DNA of 63,958 nt, the filler included, from Octopus bimaculoides (taxonomy: Eukaryota): assembly GCF_001194135.2 (NCBI RefSeq). It is 6 parts of 5 records of this genome, joined end to end, with 100 filler letters (N's around TTAATTAATTAA, not from the genome) between each part and the next. Parts side by side here need not be neighbours in the genome. Positions count along the whole stretch, not along the records: positions 16,761 to 35,164 come from NC_068986.1; 5 more parts are not named here. One strand, written 5' to 3'. Below are positions 26,005-35,312 of the stretch, piece by piece (the stretch's first letter is position 1; the number at the start of each line of letters is the position of its first letter). The position numbers and the translations under genes were made by a program. The notes under the pieces are model-generated. The model saw nothing but the letters and a program-made list of their open reading frames with translations. It was not told the origin of the DNA and did no database searches.

Positions 26005-26520
26005 ACATAAACTTATATAAACTCTTGAGTATACAAAATTATATGCACCATCGACTACACAAACTTATACACCCACGATTATACAGACTTCTTTACACCC
26101 TCAATAATAACGGCTCATATACTCTCTTAACCATAAAATTTATGTACACCATCAGCTACACAATATTATATATACCCCCTATTATACAATCTTCTATACA
26201 TCTTTGTTTATGCAAGCTTATATACACTCTTGACTATGCAAATTTATATATACGATCGACAACACAAACTTATATAAACACTACACATATACATCATTAA
26301 TATTAATTTCATATGTATATCTACATCTGTATTAGATATATGAACTTGTATACAGATGCAATTATACAAATTTATATACATTATCAGTTATACAAATATT
26401 TACATACCTTCAACTATACAAACTTTATACACATTTATCTATCCAAATTGTTGACACCCTCGATTGCACAAAGTTGCGTACACACTCTGTATATACCCCT
26501 TTTAATAATACAAATTTTGA
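26005..26520. repeat. Degenerate ~25-bp minisatellite
   Basis: Units such as actcttgactatgcaaatttatatat, accatcgactacacaaacttatac and accatcagctacacaattattatat. Confidence 0.7.
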
Positions 26521-29500
26521 TTACATTCTTTATTTAAATATACGTGGTAAGAAGCTTACTTCCCAAACACATGGTTCCTGGCTCAGTCTCATTGCATGGC
26601 ATCTTGGATAAATGTCTTGTACTAAGCCACGGGCCGACCGAACCTTTGTGAGTGGATCACCGCCTGATAACTTAACCGGTGTTGGTGTGTTTAGGTCTCC
26701 GTAATTTGACATACATCATCACAGTCTGCTGTGATGATTCTAAAATACAACACTTAAAAACCTAACGGTATATCTTTTTTCTACCCCTCTGAAGAGATTT
26801 TGCACAACACAATGATTTTATTAATTACTATTTAATCTATTAGTCCTAATTGAAACAGCTGTAAGGGACCATGTTTGATTTTTGCAGATAATATATTTTT
26901 TATTAAATGTTATATTACTATTTTCTTACTTTCTTATATACACACATTTATATTTATTTATATATATTTATAAATATTATATACACACCCATCCACACAT
27001 AACTCACACGCACACACAACTCACACACTCGCACAAACACAGACACACGCACACACAGACACACGCACACACATACATACAAATATATATACGGTGGGCT
27101 TCTCTCAGCTCCCGGATGATAAATCCGCTCACAAGGCTTTGACCATCCGAGGGCTATAGTAAATAACACTTGCTAAAGATGCCACATAGTGAAACTGAAC
27201 TGAGAACCCTGTACTTTGTAAGCAAGCTACTTAACACACAGCCACATGTAAAATGTCTCCAAACCGAAACCATTAAAACGCTTGAAATGGAAATTCCGTT
27301 TCATGTATCATTTCAATGTGCAACTCTGTCCTCTCGGGTTCTCTATAAGGTAGATACGTGTTTCCAGTAGTAAATTCATCATCACTGTTGATCTGTTTAT
27401 GTTGCTTATGTCAATAGAAATAGGAACGCCATTACACATACTAGTGCTATATGGGAAATATTGCAAATCAATAAAATTAATTTAGATGGAAAAGAAAAAA
27501 AATTGAGTCAAATTGTAGTTATACACGTTAATTGATTAATGAAAGAATTCATTCGACTCATTAGAGAACTCCCGACACTTTATAGTTCTTCTAGATTAGT
27601 CTATAGGTCTTGGTTCATCAAAGAACACAAATCATTTTTAACCTTAGAACTGATAAGGTTGGTTACTCGATTTCCATGGAGTATAAATGACTAAGGTCAC
27701 AAAATTCCACTTGAATGGGACCCCGCTCCATTCAGTGCCAGCAATTTTGAGGGGAGGGAACAAGCTGATTACACCGATATCAGTATTTGGTTGGTACATT
27801 ATTTCATCGACCTTGAAGAGATGAAAGGCAAAGTTAACCACGGCGGTATTTGAACTCAAAATGCAAAGAGCCAAAAGAAATACCACCAAGTATTTTGTAC
27901 TACGTTCTAACGATTCTGCTAGCTCGCTGTCTTCTCGGTTAATTCACATTATCCTAATTAAATTATATAATTATCACGGTTCTTTATAGTGTCCATTGTT
28001 TATTCCATGGGCTGTTAGTTCAATATTACTTCTGGATAAGTTACAAAACACAAACCTGATAAATTTTGGCGTGACAATGAGAGTAGGTTCCAACGTATTC
28101 GAATTCTTTTCCAAACAGCCTTCCATTTGAAAAAAAAATATTATTACGTAATACCGAACTTATGAATTAAATTAATATATCCCCCCCCCCACACACACAC
28201 ACACAAGCACACCAAATTTAAATCTCCACTTCAGTATCTCAATTATCAAATGTCAAGTATAAAACTTATTCTTTTATTTGTTTGTTTGTTTATTTATTTG
28301 CTCATTATGGAACATAGGAAATGATATGGAACTAATTGAAGTTCTATTATTATATTTTAAATCGATTTTTAAGGCTCAAATACGAAACTAATCATTTCTC
28401 CATCGCTGCACACATGAACAAAAGCATTTCACATGTAATGAAGGACATAGAGTATAATTGGGGAGTGTTGACTTCGAAGGAGTTTAACAATAACAATGGT
28501 TCGTGCAGTCCCAAATTGATTACGGAATGCAGATCGAGCTAAAGATCATATGAAAGATTAAATTTATGATAACTGCCCAAACTCGAAATATAACTCAGAA
28601 AAATAAAATAATAATTGATAGTTTGAATTAAATTCATTTTCATTTTCAATTCATTTGAATATGTATTATGCGATGGTCCTGTAAAATATTTTACCAGAAA
28701 GAGGACTCTTACACACGCCAGTTCAATATATGTAGCACTTCCGTATCCGGTCCGCAATACGTAAACACAATTATCTGAAGTACAAAAACACAGCCTCAAT
28801 GTTATCCTCATCTTCCGTGGGGCAACATCCCGTAGTTCTTCAGTTTATTTCCTTCATTACCTGTTTACAGTGGAATGACTTTTATCGTGTGCAGTGATTA
28901 AGAACTGATTAGTTGCATATTTGAATCTTGTACTTCTAAACAGAACTTACAAATCGATTTTGAAATATAAAATAATTAAAACTCTGCTTGAGTTATAATT
29001 TTGAACGTTCGATAACGAGCGAGAGAAAGAAAAAAAAACTATGTTATCAATATTTTTAATTGACAGAAGATTCTAATATCGAAGTAGAGATTTAAAAGGG
29101 AGGGCAGCTTACTAATCAAAATAGATAATGCTATGAGTTACACTTCGTAATCTTCGTAAATAGTCTCTGTATTTGAATGCTGATGTATGCGTGATGTGCA
29201 TAAGTGTTGAGATGGACGAGTGGTTAAGCATTTCGTTTCGTAATCACGATGTTCCGGATACGATCCGACTGCGAAGCATCTTGGGTAAATATCTCCTGCT
29301 TTAATCTCAGGTCAAAATATGTCTTGTCTTATGAGTGAAACTGTATCGGCGGAAACTGTGTGGAAGCCTGATAGATGGACTCCATCTTTGTTTCAATGGA
29401 CCTGTTTTGTCACGTGATATGTCGTATTGATTCTTCCTTACGACTGCACTAAAAGCAAGCGTGGCTGACGAAGACTCGACCCATTACACGCTAATATAAG

Positions 29501-29834: not shown

Positions 29835-31668
29835 GTAATTCATTTTCTAAAATATTCTTTGATATATTATAAAGCTCTTGATTCACTATATAACGTTTAG
29901 ATAATTATATAGGCCCTTGTCTATTACAGAGTACTTTTAGGTCTGTTTCTGTGCTTGAGGACACGCATAGTGTATTTTAACTGAGAAACAACTATAACTA
30001 GGTGCCTAGTTATTGAGCGCAGTGTTATTCATAGATTAGGGAACTGGAAGATATACGTGCACCAATGTCGTGTAATAGATATTTTGGGGGAGTTAAGGCA
30101 AGTAGTTCGGATCCTTATTTGTATAAATTAATATTTAAATATCGTTTTACGAAAACATTGATCTTCCTTAATGGAAGGGAAATAGCGTTCCAATAAATTC
30201 GCTCATCAGGAAACCTGAAAGAAGGAACGACCGACAAATAGATAAACAGAGAGACAGACTGACAAACAAATAGACAGACACTGTTGTAGCATCGTGACGC
30301 GGTCTCAAGCCTAAAGATATTTTACTGTACTACTTTCTATTGTACTATTCTAAGAGATGTAGATTCTTTCCTTTCCTCCTTCGGTTTCAGAAGCCATGTA
30401 AAATGTCATGGATATTCCCTTTCTTCCTCTGATTAAGCCAGTTACACACAGATTAATCAAGTGATAAATCCCTTAACCAGAGATACTGCTCCCGATAAAG
30501 AAAGAAAAACAAAACATAATTAAGTTACAGTGTTACTTGATATATGACAGGTAATTTTGGAAGTATAATGTTGCCACCATGGGTATCAAGAGGAAATCTA
30601 GAATACATACAGTAATTACAATTTAACTTTTATCAAATGTCTTGGTGCTTATACAAAAAAGCAAGGATGAAATGAATACATATCGTCGAAAATAAAATAT
30701 TTATTATATCAAAATAAAATTAAAACCAAATTTCCTAATTGTAGGACTTCTCCCAAACCTCCTTCTGCCAAGTATGTGCACTCATCCTGTACCTCTTGTG
30801 TTAACTCCTTCTGTATCTTCCTTTTATTCTCTCTGCATACAATGAGAACGTAACTGGAGAAATCAACCTACTACACGAAACTTCGTTTATCGCTGATTCA
30901 TTCACCGGAAGAACAGAGTACGCTCAACTGTGAACCATGTTATGATTATCACAGATTGGTCTTTGATAGCAGGTGTTGGGTGGACTGTCGAAGATTCTGC
31001 CTACACCATATAAACGCACCCTAGCGACATCCTTCCCCCCACCCCCTCACACACACACACACACATAATCCTCAGCTAACAAGAAATCACCGACTATCGT
31101 TTGTGCTTACATGAACGTGTAGCGAATCTGCGTATTTATATGGATTTTCGCACTCGTACCCATTAACATCGGACCAGTGAACAGAGAAGCTATGAAGGTG
31201 CTTCATCCAAACAAGTGACTCAGGCGAGTATCTTTTCAGCTGGAGAAGTTAAATAAGATCAAAAAGATACGAGACGGTGGATGCTTCGCAGCTTTAGGAA
31301 TTGAGTTTGCTGTCAATAAATCAACCATTAAACGTTAGCACGTATTTCGTGTCTTTACGTTCTGAAATCAAATTCCGTCCATGTCGACTTTGCCTTTCAT
31401 CCTTTCGGGGTCGATAAATTAAGTACTAGTTTCGTACTGGGATGGATCTAATCGACTGGCCCCCACCTCCCCAAAAATGTCTGGCCTTGTGCCTAGAGTA
31501 GAAACGAAAAGAGTAAATCAACCATTTATTCCATTTAAAAGTGCATGTGGTGATTCACGTATCACTGTTTTTATTATAATTTTACCAACGCATCGTGATA
31601 AACGAGGATAGATGTGTTATTGTACACAGATACTGATATTAATATTGCTAAATTAATATTTTCTACAG

Positions 31669-31740
31669 AAGCAGCGCCCCAGCATACTAGATCTATCGTG
31701 TAACACCATAGAGAAAATTGAAAACTTGAACAATCTGAAT
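31669..31740 (+). CDS. LRR exon (KQRPSILDLSCNTIEKIENLNNLN)
   Basis: Acceptor attttctacag, donor AAT|gtaagt, 72 nt, phase 0-0. Encodes the LxLSxNxIxKIENL SDS22-class repeat in frame with the previous exon. Confidence 0.85.
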
Positions 31741-32290: not shown

Positions 32291-33139
32291 ACGCCTCGTA
32301 TTTGAAATAGTTTGATTCAGCACCATGCAGCTTAAAGTTTTGTAGGCATGTTATAGAAACCTAGCTCGTAGGACTCAGCAGCCGAATTGAGAGGTTCAAG
32401 ATGTTTAAGGTGGCTACCTGAAAATGGGATGCTATCGTTCAGGATAGGTCATGTGGTGTTACCACATATGGAATTGAAATTTCAGCGACATCATATCCAT
32501 TTACGTAGAGATCCCAATATGAATTTCATGGACCTGGTGGCATCTCGTTGCCTAGCTGGTCTTCGAAGGGACTTGAGAAACATCGTATCCATGGCCGACG
32601 CAGCGGGGCAGATCGTGTGTGTAAACATATATATAAGGAGATTTTAGGACTATCATTTTTGCTTGTTGCAAAATCTGCGACTGTGAGTTCGTTTGAAATT
32701 CATATATTGCGAGCAGAAGCGAGCTACAACCATCTCTAGCAGACGATGTGTATAGTACTGAGGAATGGCAGAAATAGCGCGAAGCCAAAACTGGCCTCCT
32801 GGTCCTGATGCTAGAAGGTAGTAGAGGTTCGCTTCCCTGCTCACAATTCATCGGATGCAGCTGTGCATCGTTAACCAGCTAGCGCAGATGTCCTCTTGGC
32901 GTTAAAAAGTCGTAGTAGAGTCTGTTCGAACGAACAGCCATGTTAAAGTAACTACGATGTATGTACATGCGCGCATACGCGATTGTTATGAGCATTTTTA
33001 CTTCTTTACATTTTACTTCCTTCCTTTCGGGTTTTTTCCTCTTATTTAACGGTCATTCTAATAGCTCTTTTGTCTTAATAACAGTCAATTACATAGTAAT
33101 TTCCCTTTGTTTAACGGTCATTTTCATTGCATATTTTGA

Positions 33140-33214
33140 TTGCCTCGATAACTGAAGAGATGCCGGAGCAGGTTTCCGCCCCGACATCCGAAACTCGGGG
33201 TCTTATTATGGCAA
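33140..33214 (+). ncRNA. Type I hammerhead ribozyme motif with extended stems I and II
   Basis: Stem I ATAA/TTAT plus TTGCC/GGCAA; core CTGAAGA; stem II GATG.CGG/CCG.CATC; GAAAC; GUC at 33200-33202. One extra C precedes GAAA. Confidence 0.75.
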
Positions 33215-33599
33215 CCGAATAATTGTCACATGTTGTACTACAAATAAATTCCTGTATTTACATAATATCGAAGTCTCTTTCATTCTTTTTTGTCTTACCA
33301 TTAATATATATATATATATAAACTTTAAAAAGTTTGTTCGTTTTTTGTAATTGTGAAATTTTTTCGCCATGAACGGTTTGTGTTTTTAAATGAAATGTAT
33401 TTTTTCTGATGTAATATCTGTTCCTGAATGATGTGTAAAGAAATTTTGATTTAAGCATCTTAATGAATTCTTTATACTGAAATATATATTGAAGAAGATA
33501 AATANNNNNNNNNNNNNNNNNNNNNNNNNNNNNNNNNNNNNNNNNNNNNNNNNNNNNNNNNNNNNNNNNNNNNNNNNNNNNNNNNNNNNNNNNNNNNNN

Positions 33600-34353: not shown

Positions 34354-35090
34354 TATGAAGGTGCATTCCAGATGTTTTCAGACTTTTTCAGGAGAGACAT
34401 TAATTTCAAAGAAGTACAAAACGCTAATCGTCTTCAAAGGAAGATCCTCAACTTCGATGCACTTAAGTAGTTGTAAATTGTCAACTTAATGTGACAGTCC
34501 CCTGAAGGGAATAATACGACTGTTGGTTAGACCTAGGAAGCTGCACCGCTTCCTGTCGGCCTTGACACATTTCATGTGTCCTTATGTTTACAAGGACACA
34601 GAAAATGTGCCAAGGCCGACAGGAAGCGGTGCATCTTCCTACGTCTAACCAACATTATTCCCTTCAGGGGACTGTCAAATTAAGTTGACAGTTTACAACT
34701 ACTTCATCGTAACACTACTGTATAAATCTCTCTGAGAGATTTAGAAATGTATTATTTCTAAATTTGATGCACTTATTAAGTACTCTATCCACTTCGTGAA
34801 GGCCCCCATGGAATTTCTCCCAAGTGAAGGTGTCCAGGCTCCTTGCCATAGCCTACTCCATCTTCAAAACGACTGCTCCTTCAGTTTGGAGAACAACCAA
34901 AAGCCATAGACAGTAATGTCTAGACTGTAGGGGCGGGAGGTAAAGAACAGTTTTGGCGCCCATCTTTGTCAAGCAGGTTCGACTCATACAAATGAATCCC
35001 CAAGCCGCCTGTAACGTTTTGGCCCAGTTTAACACAAGAATCTATTGCATAGCGAGATTCACAGCGAAAATGTTCCCTGGAGTAGTATCT
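34354..35090 (-). mobile_element. Internally deleted mariner relic interrupted by a hairpin
   Basis: The - strand gives RYAIDSCVKLG, PYSLDI..FWLFSKLK (YSPDL-like motif) and KCI..SFEDD*. TIR-like tatgaaggtgcattcc begins at 34354. Confidence 0.7.
34455..34709. repeat. Long near-perfect palindrome (foldback)
   Basis: Arms aagtagttgtaaattgtcaac...gccttgacacatttc and their reverse complement surround an inner tgtgtcctt/aaggacaca hairpin. Confidence 0.9.
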
Positions 35091-35312
35091 CCTCATAGAT
35101 AATATATGTCAAAACAACATGTATATGCTATTCAACGATATTTCATTTATAAAGCACATATATANNNNNNNNNNNNNNNNNNNNNNNNNNNNNNNNNNNN
35201 NNNNNNNNTTAATTAATTAANNNNNNNNNNNNNNNNNNNNNNNNNNNNNNNNNNNNNNNNNNNNTTTTTCTTTTTTTTTGGTCTTATTGTTTCTCTGTGC
35301 TACTCTTTATTT

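What the first reader, a model, noticed from the sequence alone, without database searches (positions are those of the whole stretch)
33140..33214. Sense-strand intronic hammerhead 1.4 kb downstream of an LRR-gene donor site
Seen: CUGAAGA core, GAAAC, GUC site, a 9-bp stem I split by an internal loop and a long bulged stem II, on the same strand as the exon ending at 31740. Known: stem I/stem II tertiary contacts speed up hammerheads, and intronic hammerheads occur in animal genes. Inference: the pre-mRNA intron could self-cleave co-transcriptionally and affect splicing or output of this CEP97-like gene. One extra C before G12 may reduce activity.
Basis: partly seen in the sequence, partly recalled or inferred. 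Interest (0 to 1): 0.75.

Follow-up and report, generated by a model that had tools for sequence, protein, structure and literature searches.

The report
Solo retroelement-type hammerhead ribozyme motif
The sequence really does contain a complete type I hammerhead ribozyme motif, but it is most likely a lone, probably weak leftover of the ribozyme-carrying retroelements common in invertebrate genomes, not a device that regulates the neighbouring gene.

Summary
Positions 33140-33214 (+) carry every conserved hammerhead core base (CUGAAGA, GAAA, A15.1-U16.1, C17), with cleavage predicted at 33202|33203. Helix I is 4+5 bp around a 3x3 internal loop, helix II is long and irregular, and helix III is 2 bp. 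A strict descriptor finds it once in the piece, 0 times in 2000 shuffles, and about 0.005 times per Mb per strand in random sequence.

It is a marginal hammerhead. Rfam Hammerhead_1 scores 16.7 bits against a gathering score of 34. The G10.1-C11.1 pair needs a bulged C; otherwise an extra C sits before G12. The predicted MFE fold (-21.8 kcal/mol) is a rival hairpin, against -12.8 to -16.2 for the ribozyme fold.

There is no second copy, no tandem repeat, no PLE reading frame nearby and no paralogue in the piece. The host gene rests on one 24-codon LRR-like exon that matches no protein in the database. Cross-species conservation could not be tested.

The best reading is a solo type I hammerhead of the Penelope-like element/retrozyme kind, probably weak or inactive alone. 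This is a new member of a known kind and of low interest.

The parts
33140..33214 (+). Complete type I hammerhead motif (75 nt)
   Evidence: Sequence read. Strict descriptor hit. Rfam Hammerhead_1 alignment at 33146-33211, 16.7 bits.
33140..33151 (+). Helix I 5' strand: UUGCC (distal), UCG (internal loop), AUAA (proximal)
   Evidence: Pairing listed. Helix I pairs have 0.65-0.98 ensemble probability.
33152..33158 (+). Core box C3-A9: CUGAAGA
33159..33189 (+). Helix II: G10.1...C11.1, GAUG/CAUC plus an irregular GC-rich extension closed by a UUU loop. C33188 or C33189 is unpaired.
   Evidence: The segment alone folds at -11.2 kcal/mol in the GAUG/CAUC register. Both registers are compared.
33190..33193 (+). 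Core box G12 A13 A14 A15.1: GAAA
33193..33201 (+). Helix III: A-U and C-G (with an optional U.G) and loop UCGGG. The 9-mer ACUCGGGGU is nearly self-complementary.
   Evidence: Ensemble probability is about 1-2e-4.
33202..33203 (+). Predicted cleavage site: C17 (33202) | U1.1 (33203)
   Evidence: Position follows from the core numbering. Cleavage itself was not tested.
33203..33214 (+). Helix I 3' strand: UUAU, UAU (internal loop), GGCAA
33178..33201 (+). Competing hairpin GCCCCGA/UCGGGGU that encloses the GAAA box in its loop and excludes helices II and III
   Evidence: It is the MFE and centroid structure at -21.8 kcal/mol. The hairpin alone is -10.4 kcal/mol.
33035..33130 (+). Local 65-nt tandem duplication just 5' of the motif (33035-33065 and 33100-33130, 81% identity). 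Weaker similarity runs into the helix I 5' strand.
   Evidence: Repeat D12, D1, alignment A1.
33304..33320 (.). (TA)8 microsatellite 100 nt 3' of the motif. More (TA)n borders the assembly gap at 33505-33599.
31669..31740 (+). LRR-like 72-nt exon candidate (context only; its reality is unverified)
   Evidence: Splice-like borders and frame. No Pfam hit. No protein match.

Best explanation
This is a solitary copy of the type I hammerhead carried by animal retroelements: Penelope-like element (PLE) pseudo-LTRs and their non-autonomous derivatives, the non-LTR retrozymes. It sits in AT-rich non-coding DNA that may or may not be an intron.

In the parent elements the ribozyme cuts multimeric or read-through transcripts after C17 into unit-length RNAs with 5'-OH and 2',3'-cyclic phosphate ends. 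Those RNAs can be circularised and reverse-transcribed. That step is established in the literature and was not shown here.

At this locus only one copy remains. It has a 2-bp helix III, an irregular helix II/G12 junction and a strongly competing alternative hairpin. I infer that it cleaves poorly or not at all on its own, and that any effect on a host transcript is incidental rather than selected.
For: 1. All core positions and all three helices are present. The strict descriptor gives 1 hit in the piece against 0 in 2000 shuffles, and about 0.005 per Mb per strand in random sequence.

2. The architecture matches the published description of animal type I hammerheads: an internal loop in helix I, a helix II base of 4 bp, and a helix III of 1-2 bp with a small loop (PMC4209133). 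[quoted passage not shown]

3. Single dispersed motifs are the commonest genomic state and are attributed to truncated PLEs (PMC4209133). 'Solo' retrozyme monomers are also described (10.64898/2026.07.22.740005).

4. A relaxed min-hammerhead descriptor finds 3 loci in this 16.6-kb piece against 0.055 expected. One of them lies in each arm of an inverted duplication (17327-17559), an arrangement reported for PLE insertions (PMC4209133, PMC8557442). This suggests a genome rich in hammerhead-bearing repeats.

6. Rfam's silence is uninformative. A textbook PLE hammerhead 215 nt 3' of an RT ORF in control locus L003 is also missed by Rfam at E<=1.

7. Weak activity is suggested by the fold energies: -12.8 and -16.2 kcal/mol for the ribozyme fold against -21.8 for the rival (ensemble probabilities).
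Against: No repeat-family membership could be shown.

- There is no paralogue in the piece.
- There is no tandem unit.
- There is no RT or GIY-YIG remnant in six frames of 31.8-33.3 kb.
- The 32.1-32.9 kb pseudo-ORF has no protein homologue.
- No genome of the source organism was available to search.

The motif lacks the extra base between A9 and G10.1 that marks PLE minimal hammerheads. The other two hammerhead-like motifs in the piece get no Rfam hammerhead hit even locally. The source organism is unverified. Nearest-neighbour energies ignore hammerhead tertiary contacts and co-transcriptional folding, in which helix II forms before its competitor is made, so activity cannot be excluded.
Confidence: 0.68

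Rival explanations
1. This is a domesticated intronic hammerhead. Under this reading the motif is transcribed within the pre-mRNA of an LRR gene, cleaves co-transcriptionally at 33202|33203 and modulates splicing or output, like the HH9/HH10-type ribozymes of amniote introns.
For: The motif is on the same strand as an exon-like LRR ORF with good splice consensus, and 1.4 kb downstream of it. The core is complete and helix I has an internal loop that could support loop-loop contacts. Helix II would form first during transcription, at -11.2 kcal/mol alone. Domesticated intronic hammerheads derived from retroelement hammerheads are known in amniotes (PMC6155905).
Against: The exon is unverified. 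It has no Pfam hit and no match among 5.8 billion proteins. No second exon is in the piece. No downstream exon is seen, so intron status is unknown. The ribozyme fold is disfavoured by 5.6-9 kcal/mol. There is an irregularity next to G12. Conservation was not testable. Retrozyme-type hammerheads are reported to be depleted from introns in Xenopus (10.64898/2026.07.22.740005), which argues against tolerance rather than for function.
Confidence: 0.06
2. The motif is part of a larger, possibly still active, tandem retrozyme or PLE array whose other copies are hidden in or beyond the assembly gap at 33505-33599. In that case the hammerhead would work as a dimer with a neighbouring copy.
For: The assembly gap lies only 300 nt downstream and is bordered by (TA)n. 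PLE tandem and inverted insertions are known to break short-read assemblies, and N-terminal-EN PLEs (Naiads) target (TA)n (PMC8557442). The helix III 9-mer ACUCGGGGU is nearly self-complementary, which is the hallmark of dimer-acting hammerheads (PMC4209133). There is a local 65-nt duplication just upstream.
Against: The sequence after the gap shows no similarity to the sequence before the motif. There is no second hammerhead within the remaining 1.9 kb. No tandem period was detected. No RT or EN coding remnant was found.
Confidence: 0.12
3. The resemblance is due to chance: an AT-rich stretch with a GC-rich hairpin that happens to spell the hammerhead boxes.
For: The most stable fold is a plain hairpin, not a hammerhead, and the fold z-score is only -0.91. 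The Rfam score is half the gathering score. About 30 strict-descriptor hits per 2.7 Gb genome are expected by chance. A 21-base pattern taken from this motif also matched an unrelated GC-rich metagenome contig.
Against: The expectation per piece is about 1.7e-4. The extra 5-bp distal helix I was not in the descriptor and lowers that by a further ~30-fold (my estimate from base composition). Hammerhead-like motifs are about 50-fold over-represented in the piece. Genuine hammerheads number in the thousands in many invertebrate genomes (PMC4209133, PMC7229834), so the prior odds favour a real one.
Confidence: 0.12

Closest known systems
Canonical type I hammerheads of metazoan non-LTR retrozymes (coral, mussel, salamander satellite-2; PMC7229834)
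   Same: Type I topology, a full core, an internal loop in helix I, a 2-bp helix III with a small loop, and AT-rich surroundings (flanks 20-35% GC).
   Different: There is no tandem array or second copy. Helix II is much longer than the usual 4 bp plus loop. There is a bulged or inserted C next to G12. The conserved loop1-loop2 contact bases were not identified.
Minimal hammerheads in pseudo-LTRs of Penelope-like elements (PMC4209133; control example L003:5616-5648)
   Same: A dispersed single motif, a long helix II, a nearly self-complementary helix III region, low predicted monomer stability, and proximity to a (TA)n tract.
   Different: There is no RT/GIY-YIG ORF or pseudo-LTR nearby. There is no unpaired base between A9 and G10.1; the irregularity is on the 3' side of helix II instead. 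A real helix III loop and a two-part helix I are present.
Ultraconserved intronic hammerheads of amniotes (RECK, CTCL, DTNB; Rfam HH9/HH10; PMC6155905)
   Same: A type I hammerhead, possibly on the sense strand of an intron, probably of retroelement ancestry.
   Different: Those are defined by deep conservation and verified host genes. Here neither conservation nor the host gene could be verified, and the predicted fold is unfavourable.
Rfam RF00163 Hammerhead_1
   Same: It aligns over all 45 model positions with the core intact.
   Different: It scores 16.7 bits against a gathering score of 34, owing to a 29-nt helix II insert and a 3-nt insert in helix I. It is not a member by Rfam's own criterion.

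Membership tests
Hammerhead ribozyme, type I | Conserved core: C3 U4 G5 A6 N7 G8 A9, G12 A13 A14, A15.1-U16.1, H17 (not G) | tested here: met
   CUGAAGA at 33152-58, GAAA at 33190-93, U33201 and C33202.
Hammerhead ribozyme, type I | G10.1-C11.1 pair directly flanking A9 and G12 | tested here: inconclusive
   It is possible only with C33188 bulged (-12.8 kcal/mol). The more stable register puts an extra C33189 before G12 (-16.2).
Hammerhead ribozyme, type I | Three helices around the core, with helix I open | tested here: inconclusive
   All three can be drawn, and helix I is robust. Helices II and III lose to a rival hairpin in the MFE and the ensemble.
Hammerhead ribozyme, type I | Score at or above the Rfam RF00163 gathering threshold | tested here: not met
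   No hit at gathering. 16.7 bits against 34.
Hammerhead ribozyme, type I | Covariation in the helices among homologues | not testable with these tools
   No homologous copy could be retrieved.
Hammerhead ribozyme, type I | Site-specific self-cleavage after H17 | not testable with these tools
   This needs an in vitro or in vivo assay.
PLE pseudo-LTR minimal hammerhead | Lies in the repeat flanking an RT plus GIY-YIG ORF | tested here: not met
   Six-frame Pfam scans of 31.8-33.3 kb and 33.6-35.2 kb found no domain. A 5'-truncated copy shorter than about 1 kb cannot be excluded.
PLE pseudo-LTR minimal hammerhead | Unpaired nucleotide between A9 and G10.1, and helix II of 6-8 bp | tested here: not met
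   G follows A9 directly. Helix II is 4 bp and then irregular.
PLE pseudo-LTR minimal hammerhead | Palindromic 15.2-16.2 / loop 3 | tested here: inconclusive
   The 9-mer ACUCGGGGU pairs with itself at 8 of 9 positions: 2 A-U, 4 C-G, 2 U.G wobbles and a central G.G mismatch (read from the sequence). The cofold of two copies did not give a hammerhead dimer as its MFE.
Metazoan non-LTR retrozyme | Tandem repeats of about 150-450 bp, each with a type I hammerhead | tested here: not met
   TRF finds only (AT)8. There is one strict hammerhead in the piece. An assembly gap 300 nt away leaves some doubt.
Metazoan non-LTR retrozyme | Low GC (<45%) non-coding unit | tested here: met
   Flanks are 20-35% GC. 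No coding signal was found.
Domesticated intronic hammerhead (HH9/HH10-like) | Sense strand of an intron of a verified gene | tested here: inconclusive
   There is one LRR-like exon upstream on the same strand. It is not recognised by Pfam or by any database protein. No downstream exon is seen.
Domesticated intronic hammerhead (HH9/HH10-like) | Conservation at the orthologous site across species | not testable with these tools
   No eukaryotic genome DNA of related species could be reached.

The most novel reading that the evidence does not exclude
A retroelement hammerhead has been co-opted in a mollusc/cephalopod LRR (CEP97-like) gene as a sense-strand intronic ribozyme. The rival hairpin (33178-33201) would act as a built-in switch that gates self-cleavage and thereby splicing or transcript output. 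This would be the first domesticated intronic hammerhead outside amniotes.
Probability: 0.04. Interest if true: 0.65.

Novelty: new member of a known kind. Interest (0 to 1): 0.25.

Why it matters
If the best reading is right, this is one more of the thousands of retroelement-borne hammerheads scattered in invertebrate genomes. Its use is as an annotation mark. It flags a PLE/retrozyme relic that protein-based repeat annotation and Rfam both miss. It also indicates that the source genome carries hammerhead-bearing repeats, which I did not find reported for cephalopods in the searched literature. It would matter more only if the motif proved to be conserved at this intron and active, because domesticated intronic hammerheads are so far documented only in amniotes.

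Tried and rejected
1. Rfam at gathering over the whole piece gave nothing. At E<=10 over the whole piece it gave only hairpin and microsatellite look-alikes of miRNA families.

2. I looked for a PLE ORF next to the motif. Pfam on local ORFs and on six-frame translations found nothing.

3. I looked for paralogues inside the piece by sensitive blastn and found none beyond (TA)n.

4. I tried to reach the source genome through exact-ORF look-ups.

5. I tried to identify the host gene. Padded to 50 aa it gave 1 candidate and no score.

6. I tried to classify the 32.1-32.9 kb block, which has higher GC and a 108-codon open frame on the minus strand. It has no homologue, so it was rejected as a recognisable TE gene.

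7. A metagenome scan with a 21-base motif-specific pattern gave one hit, in a GC-rich unrelated contig (L001). It was rejected as chance.

8. I built a PLE RT/EN query from memory to reach octopus PLEs. It found 1205 PLE proteins, but the listed top 120 are crustacean-like or unnamed and none is from an octopus. They were used only as controls (L002, L003).

9. The 21-nt inverted repeat 32929-32949 / 33322-33342 that brackets the motif was considered as MITE ends. It was rejected because it has 81% complementarity, no target-site duplication, and is plausible by chance.

10. I read a mariner-like C-terminus at 34.75-35.1 kb (minus strand) by eye. Pfam does not support it.

11. No tRNA or SINE head was found next to the motif.

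Full report
**What is there.** Reading 33140-33214 on the + strand gives UUGCCUCGAUAA-CUGAAGA-GAUGCCGGAGCAGGUUUCCGCCCCGACAUCC-GAAA-CUCGGGGU-C-UUAUUAUGGCAA. In standard hammerhead numbering:
- C3-A9 is 33152-33158.
- G10.1 is 33159.
- G12-A14 is 33190-33192.
- A15.1 is 33193, paired with U16.1 at 33201.
- C15.2 (33194) pairs with G16.2 (33200).
- C17 is 33202, so cleavage would leave a 5'-OH at 33203.

Helix I is AUAA/UUAU next to the core, then a 3x3 internal loop (UCG/UAU), then UUGCC/GGCAA. Helix II starts GAUG/CAUC and continues as an irregular GC-rich stem closed by UUU; alone it folds at -11.2 kcal/mol. There are two Cs before G12. Either C33188 bulges and the canonical G10.1-C11.1 pair forms, which is how Infernal aligns it. 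Or GAUG/CAUC is contiguous and C33189 is an insertion into the core.

**Is it more than chance?** I wrote a strict type I descriptor with these requirements:
- CUGANGA followed by G
- a C-GAAA within 60 nt
- at least 3 further helix II pairs, with one bulge allowed
- a 2-bp helix III with a 2-8 nt loop
- U-H at the cleavage site
- at least 4 contiguous helix I pairs

It hits once in the piece, at this site, and never in 2000 dinucleotide shuffles. In 1340 Mb of random sequence with the piece's composition it hits 7 times. That is about 0.005 per Mb per strand, 1.7e-4 per piece, and about 30 per 2.7 Gb genome. The distal 5-bp part of helix I was not required. By my estimate from base composition it lowers the chance by a further ~30-fold.

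The curated model is unimpressed. There is no Rfam hit at gathering. Hammerhead_1 gives 16.7 bits against 34, and E=0.15 only when 161 nt are searched alone. This matters less than it seems. A textbook Penelope-like-element hammerhead in a control locus (L003:5616-5648, 215 nt 3' of the RT ORF) is also invisible to Rfam at E<=1.

**Would it fold and cut?** The predicted MFE and centroid structure of the 75-mer (-21.8 kcal/mol; z = -0.91 against shuffles) is not a hammerhead. GCCCCGA (33178-33184, the 3' side of helix II) pairs with UCGGGGU (33195-33201, the helix III region) and traps the GAAA box in a 10-nt loop. Forcing the ribozyme fold gives -12.8 kcal/mol in the canonical register and -16.2 with C33189 inserted. 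In the ensemble, helix II has about 5% probability and helix III about 0.02%, while helix I is stable.

These energies ignore hammerhead tertiary contacts and co-transcriptional order, since helix II is made before its competitor. Activity therefore cannot be excluded. Even so, this is not the profile of an efficient monomeric ribozyme. The 9-mer ACUCGGGGU is nearly self-complementary, with a central G.G mismatch and two U.G wobbles. That recalls hammerheads that act as dimers (PMC4209133), but only one copy is present.

**Surroundings.**
- No second hammerhead, tandem period or paralogue exists in the piece.
- A 65-nt local duplication lies just upstream: 33035-33065 and 33100-33130, 81% identity.
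- (TA)8 lies 100 nt downstream, and a 95-N assembly gap bordered by (TA)n lies 300 nt downstream.
- Six-frame Pfam scans of 31.8-33.3 kb and 33.6-35.2 kb find no RT, GIY-YIG or transposase domain.
- The higher-GC block at 32.15-32.95 kb, with a 108-codon open frame on the minus strand, has no homologue among 5.8 billion proteins.

**The 'LRR gene'.** This rests on one 72-nt ORF at 31669-31740 (KQRPSILDLSCNTIEKIENLNNLN), with ctacag|A and AAT|gtaagt borders. The pattern is typical of SDS22-type repeats. However, it is the only such exon in the piece. Pfam does not score it, and no database protein shares it. No downstream exon is visible, so 'intronic' and 'CEP97-like' remain unverified.

**Wider signal in the piece.** A relaxed descriptor allows U3-A8 cores, an extra base after A9, a helix III loop of 0-8 nt and a helix I of at least 3 bp. 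It recovers the control PLE hammerhead and finds three loci in the piece: this one, 26789-26863 (+) and 17393-17360 (-). Only 0.055 loci are expected per shuffled piece.

The 17.4-kb motif is CUGAAGA-G-GUCACA-GAUG-UGUGAC-GAAA. It has the extra base after A9 and the 6-bp helix II typical of PLE minimal hammerheads. It sits in one arm of a 115-nt-arm inverted duplication whose other arm has a mutated core, CUCAAGA. Opposite-strand pairs and inverted truncated copies are reported for PLEs (PMC4209133, PMC8557442). Neither extra motif gets an Rfam hammerhead hit, so I treat them as suggestive only.

**Comparison with what is known.** Most animal type I hammerheads belong to PLE pseudo-LTRs or to non-LTR retrozymes. 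Most genomic copies are single dispersed motifs ascribed to truncated elements, and helix III is typically 1-2 bp (PMC4209133, PMC7229834). Retrozymes appear to be PLE derivatives (10.64898/2026.07.22.740005). Canonical PLEs carry hammerheads near their 3' ends (PMC8557442). Domesticated intronic hammerheads are known in amniotes and are defined by deep conservation (PMC6155905).

The present motif resembles the canonical retrozyme type more than the PLE minimal type, because it has a helix III loop, a two-part helix I and no base between A9 and G10.1. It fails the tandem-repeat criterion for retrozymes and the adjacent-ORF criterion for PLEs. I therefore file it as 'works like / derives from' this class, not as a proven member of either family.

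**What could not be done.** No tool gave access to eukaryotic genome DNA by nucleotide similarity.
- Exact-ORF look-ups failed.
- A motif-specific metagenome scan gave one unrelated GC-rich hit.
- A PLE protein query reached 1205 PLE proteins, but none identifiable as cephalopod among those listed.

Copy number, family consensus, covariation and cross-species conservation all remain untested. These are the decisive tests between relic, domesticated element and chance.

**Verdict.** The intronic-regulator interpretation is only partly supported. I estimate the readings as follows:
- Solo retroelement-type hammerhead, probably weak or inactive: about 0.68
- Part of an array hidden by the assembly gap: about 0.12
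- Chance: about 0.12
- Domesticated intronic ribozyme: about 0.06

This is a new member of a known kind, with interest 0.25.

Noticed in passing
window 17327-17559 (motif on - strand at 17393-17360): An inverted duplication with 115-nt arms at 87% complementarity. One arm carries a PLE-like minimal hammerhead core (CUGAAGA-G-GUCACA-GAUG-UGUGAC-GAAA). The other arm has the same sequence with the core mutated to CUCAAGA. The long hairpin also produces sub-threshold Rfam miRNA look-alike hits (MIR5380, mir-4716). No Rfam hammerhead hit was found locally.
   Followed up: partly
window 26789-26863 (+): A third hammerhead-like motif: CUGAAGAG, a helix III C-G closed by the palindromic loop AGCU, A17, and a 4-bp helix I. 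However, it has a 60-nt AT-rich 'helix II' closed by G.U instead of G-C. It may be a decayed hammerhead or chance. No Rfam hammerhead hit was found.
   Followed up: partly
window 34521-34654, extending to about 34462-34706: A long, nearly perfect palindrome (63-nt arms at 92%, with longer imperfect arms around them). It is foldback/MITE-like and gives sub-threshold miRNA-family look-alike hits (mir-3910, mir-4716).
   Followed up: no
window 23155-23264, 31360-31469 (direct, 74%) and 27799-27876 (inverted, 73%): Three copies of a short interspersed repeat containing ...GCCTTTCATCCTTTCGGGGTCGATAAATTAAGTAC.... It is probably a SINE family. One copy lies 200 nt upstream of the LRR-like exon.
   Followed up: no
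window 34745-35110 (- strand): Read by eye, the translation ...RPYSLDITVYGFWLFSKLKEQSF... resembles the C-terminal PPYSPDLAPSDFWLFPKLK block of Tc1/mariner transposases. Pfam gave no hit, so this is unconfirmed.
   Followed up: partly
window 26009-26435: An array of degenerate 26-nt-period repeats (8 copies of a 68-nt reference, 62-82% identity).
   Followed up: no
window 17756-18681, 19482-19886, 24717-25120, 33505-33599: Four runs of N (assembly gaps), most bordered by (TA)n or (CA)n microsatellites. The piece is a draft assembly with 35.5% GC, and the source organism could not be verified.
   Followed up: no
L003:5616-5648 (ENA metagenome contig ctg144953_3x_l): The control PLE locus carries a textbook minimal hammerhead, ACGACG-CUGAAGA-C-GACUU...AAGUC-GAAA-CGCG-UA-CGUCGU, 215 nt after the RT ORF. 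Rfam does not report it at E<=1, which shows the blind spot of the curated models for this class.
   Followed up: yes
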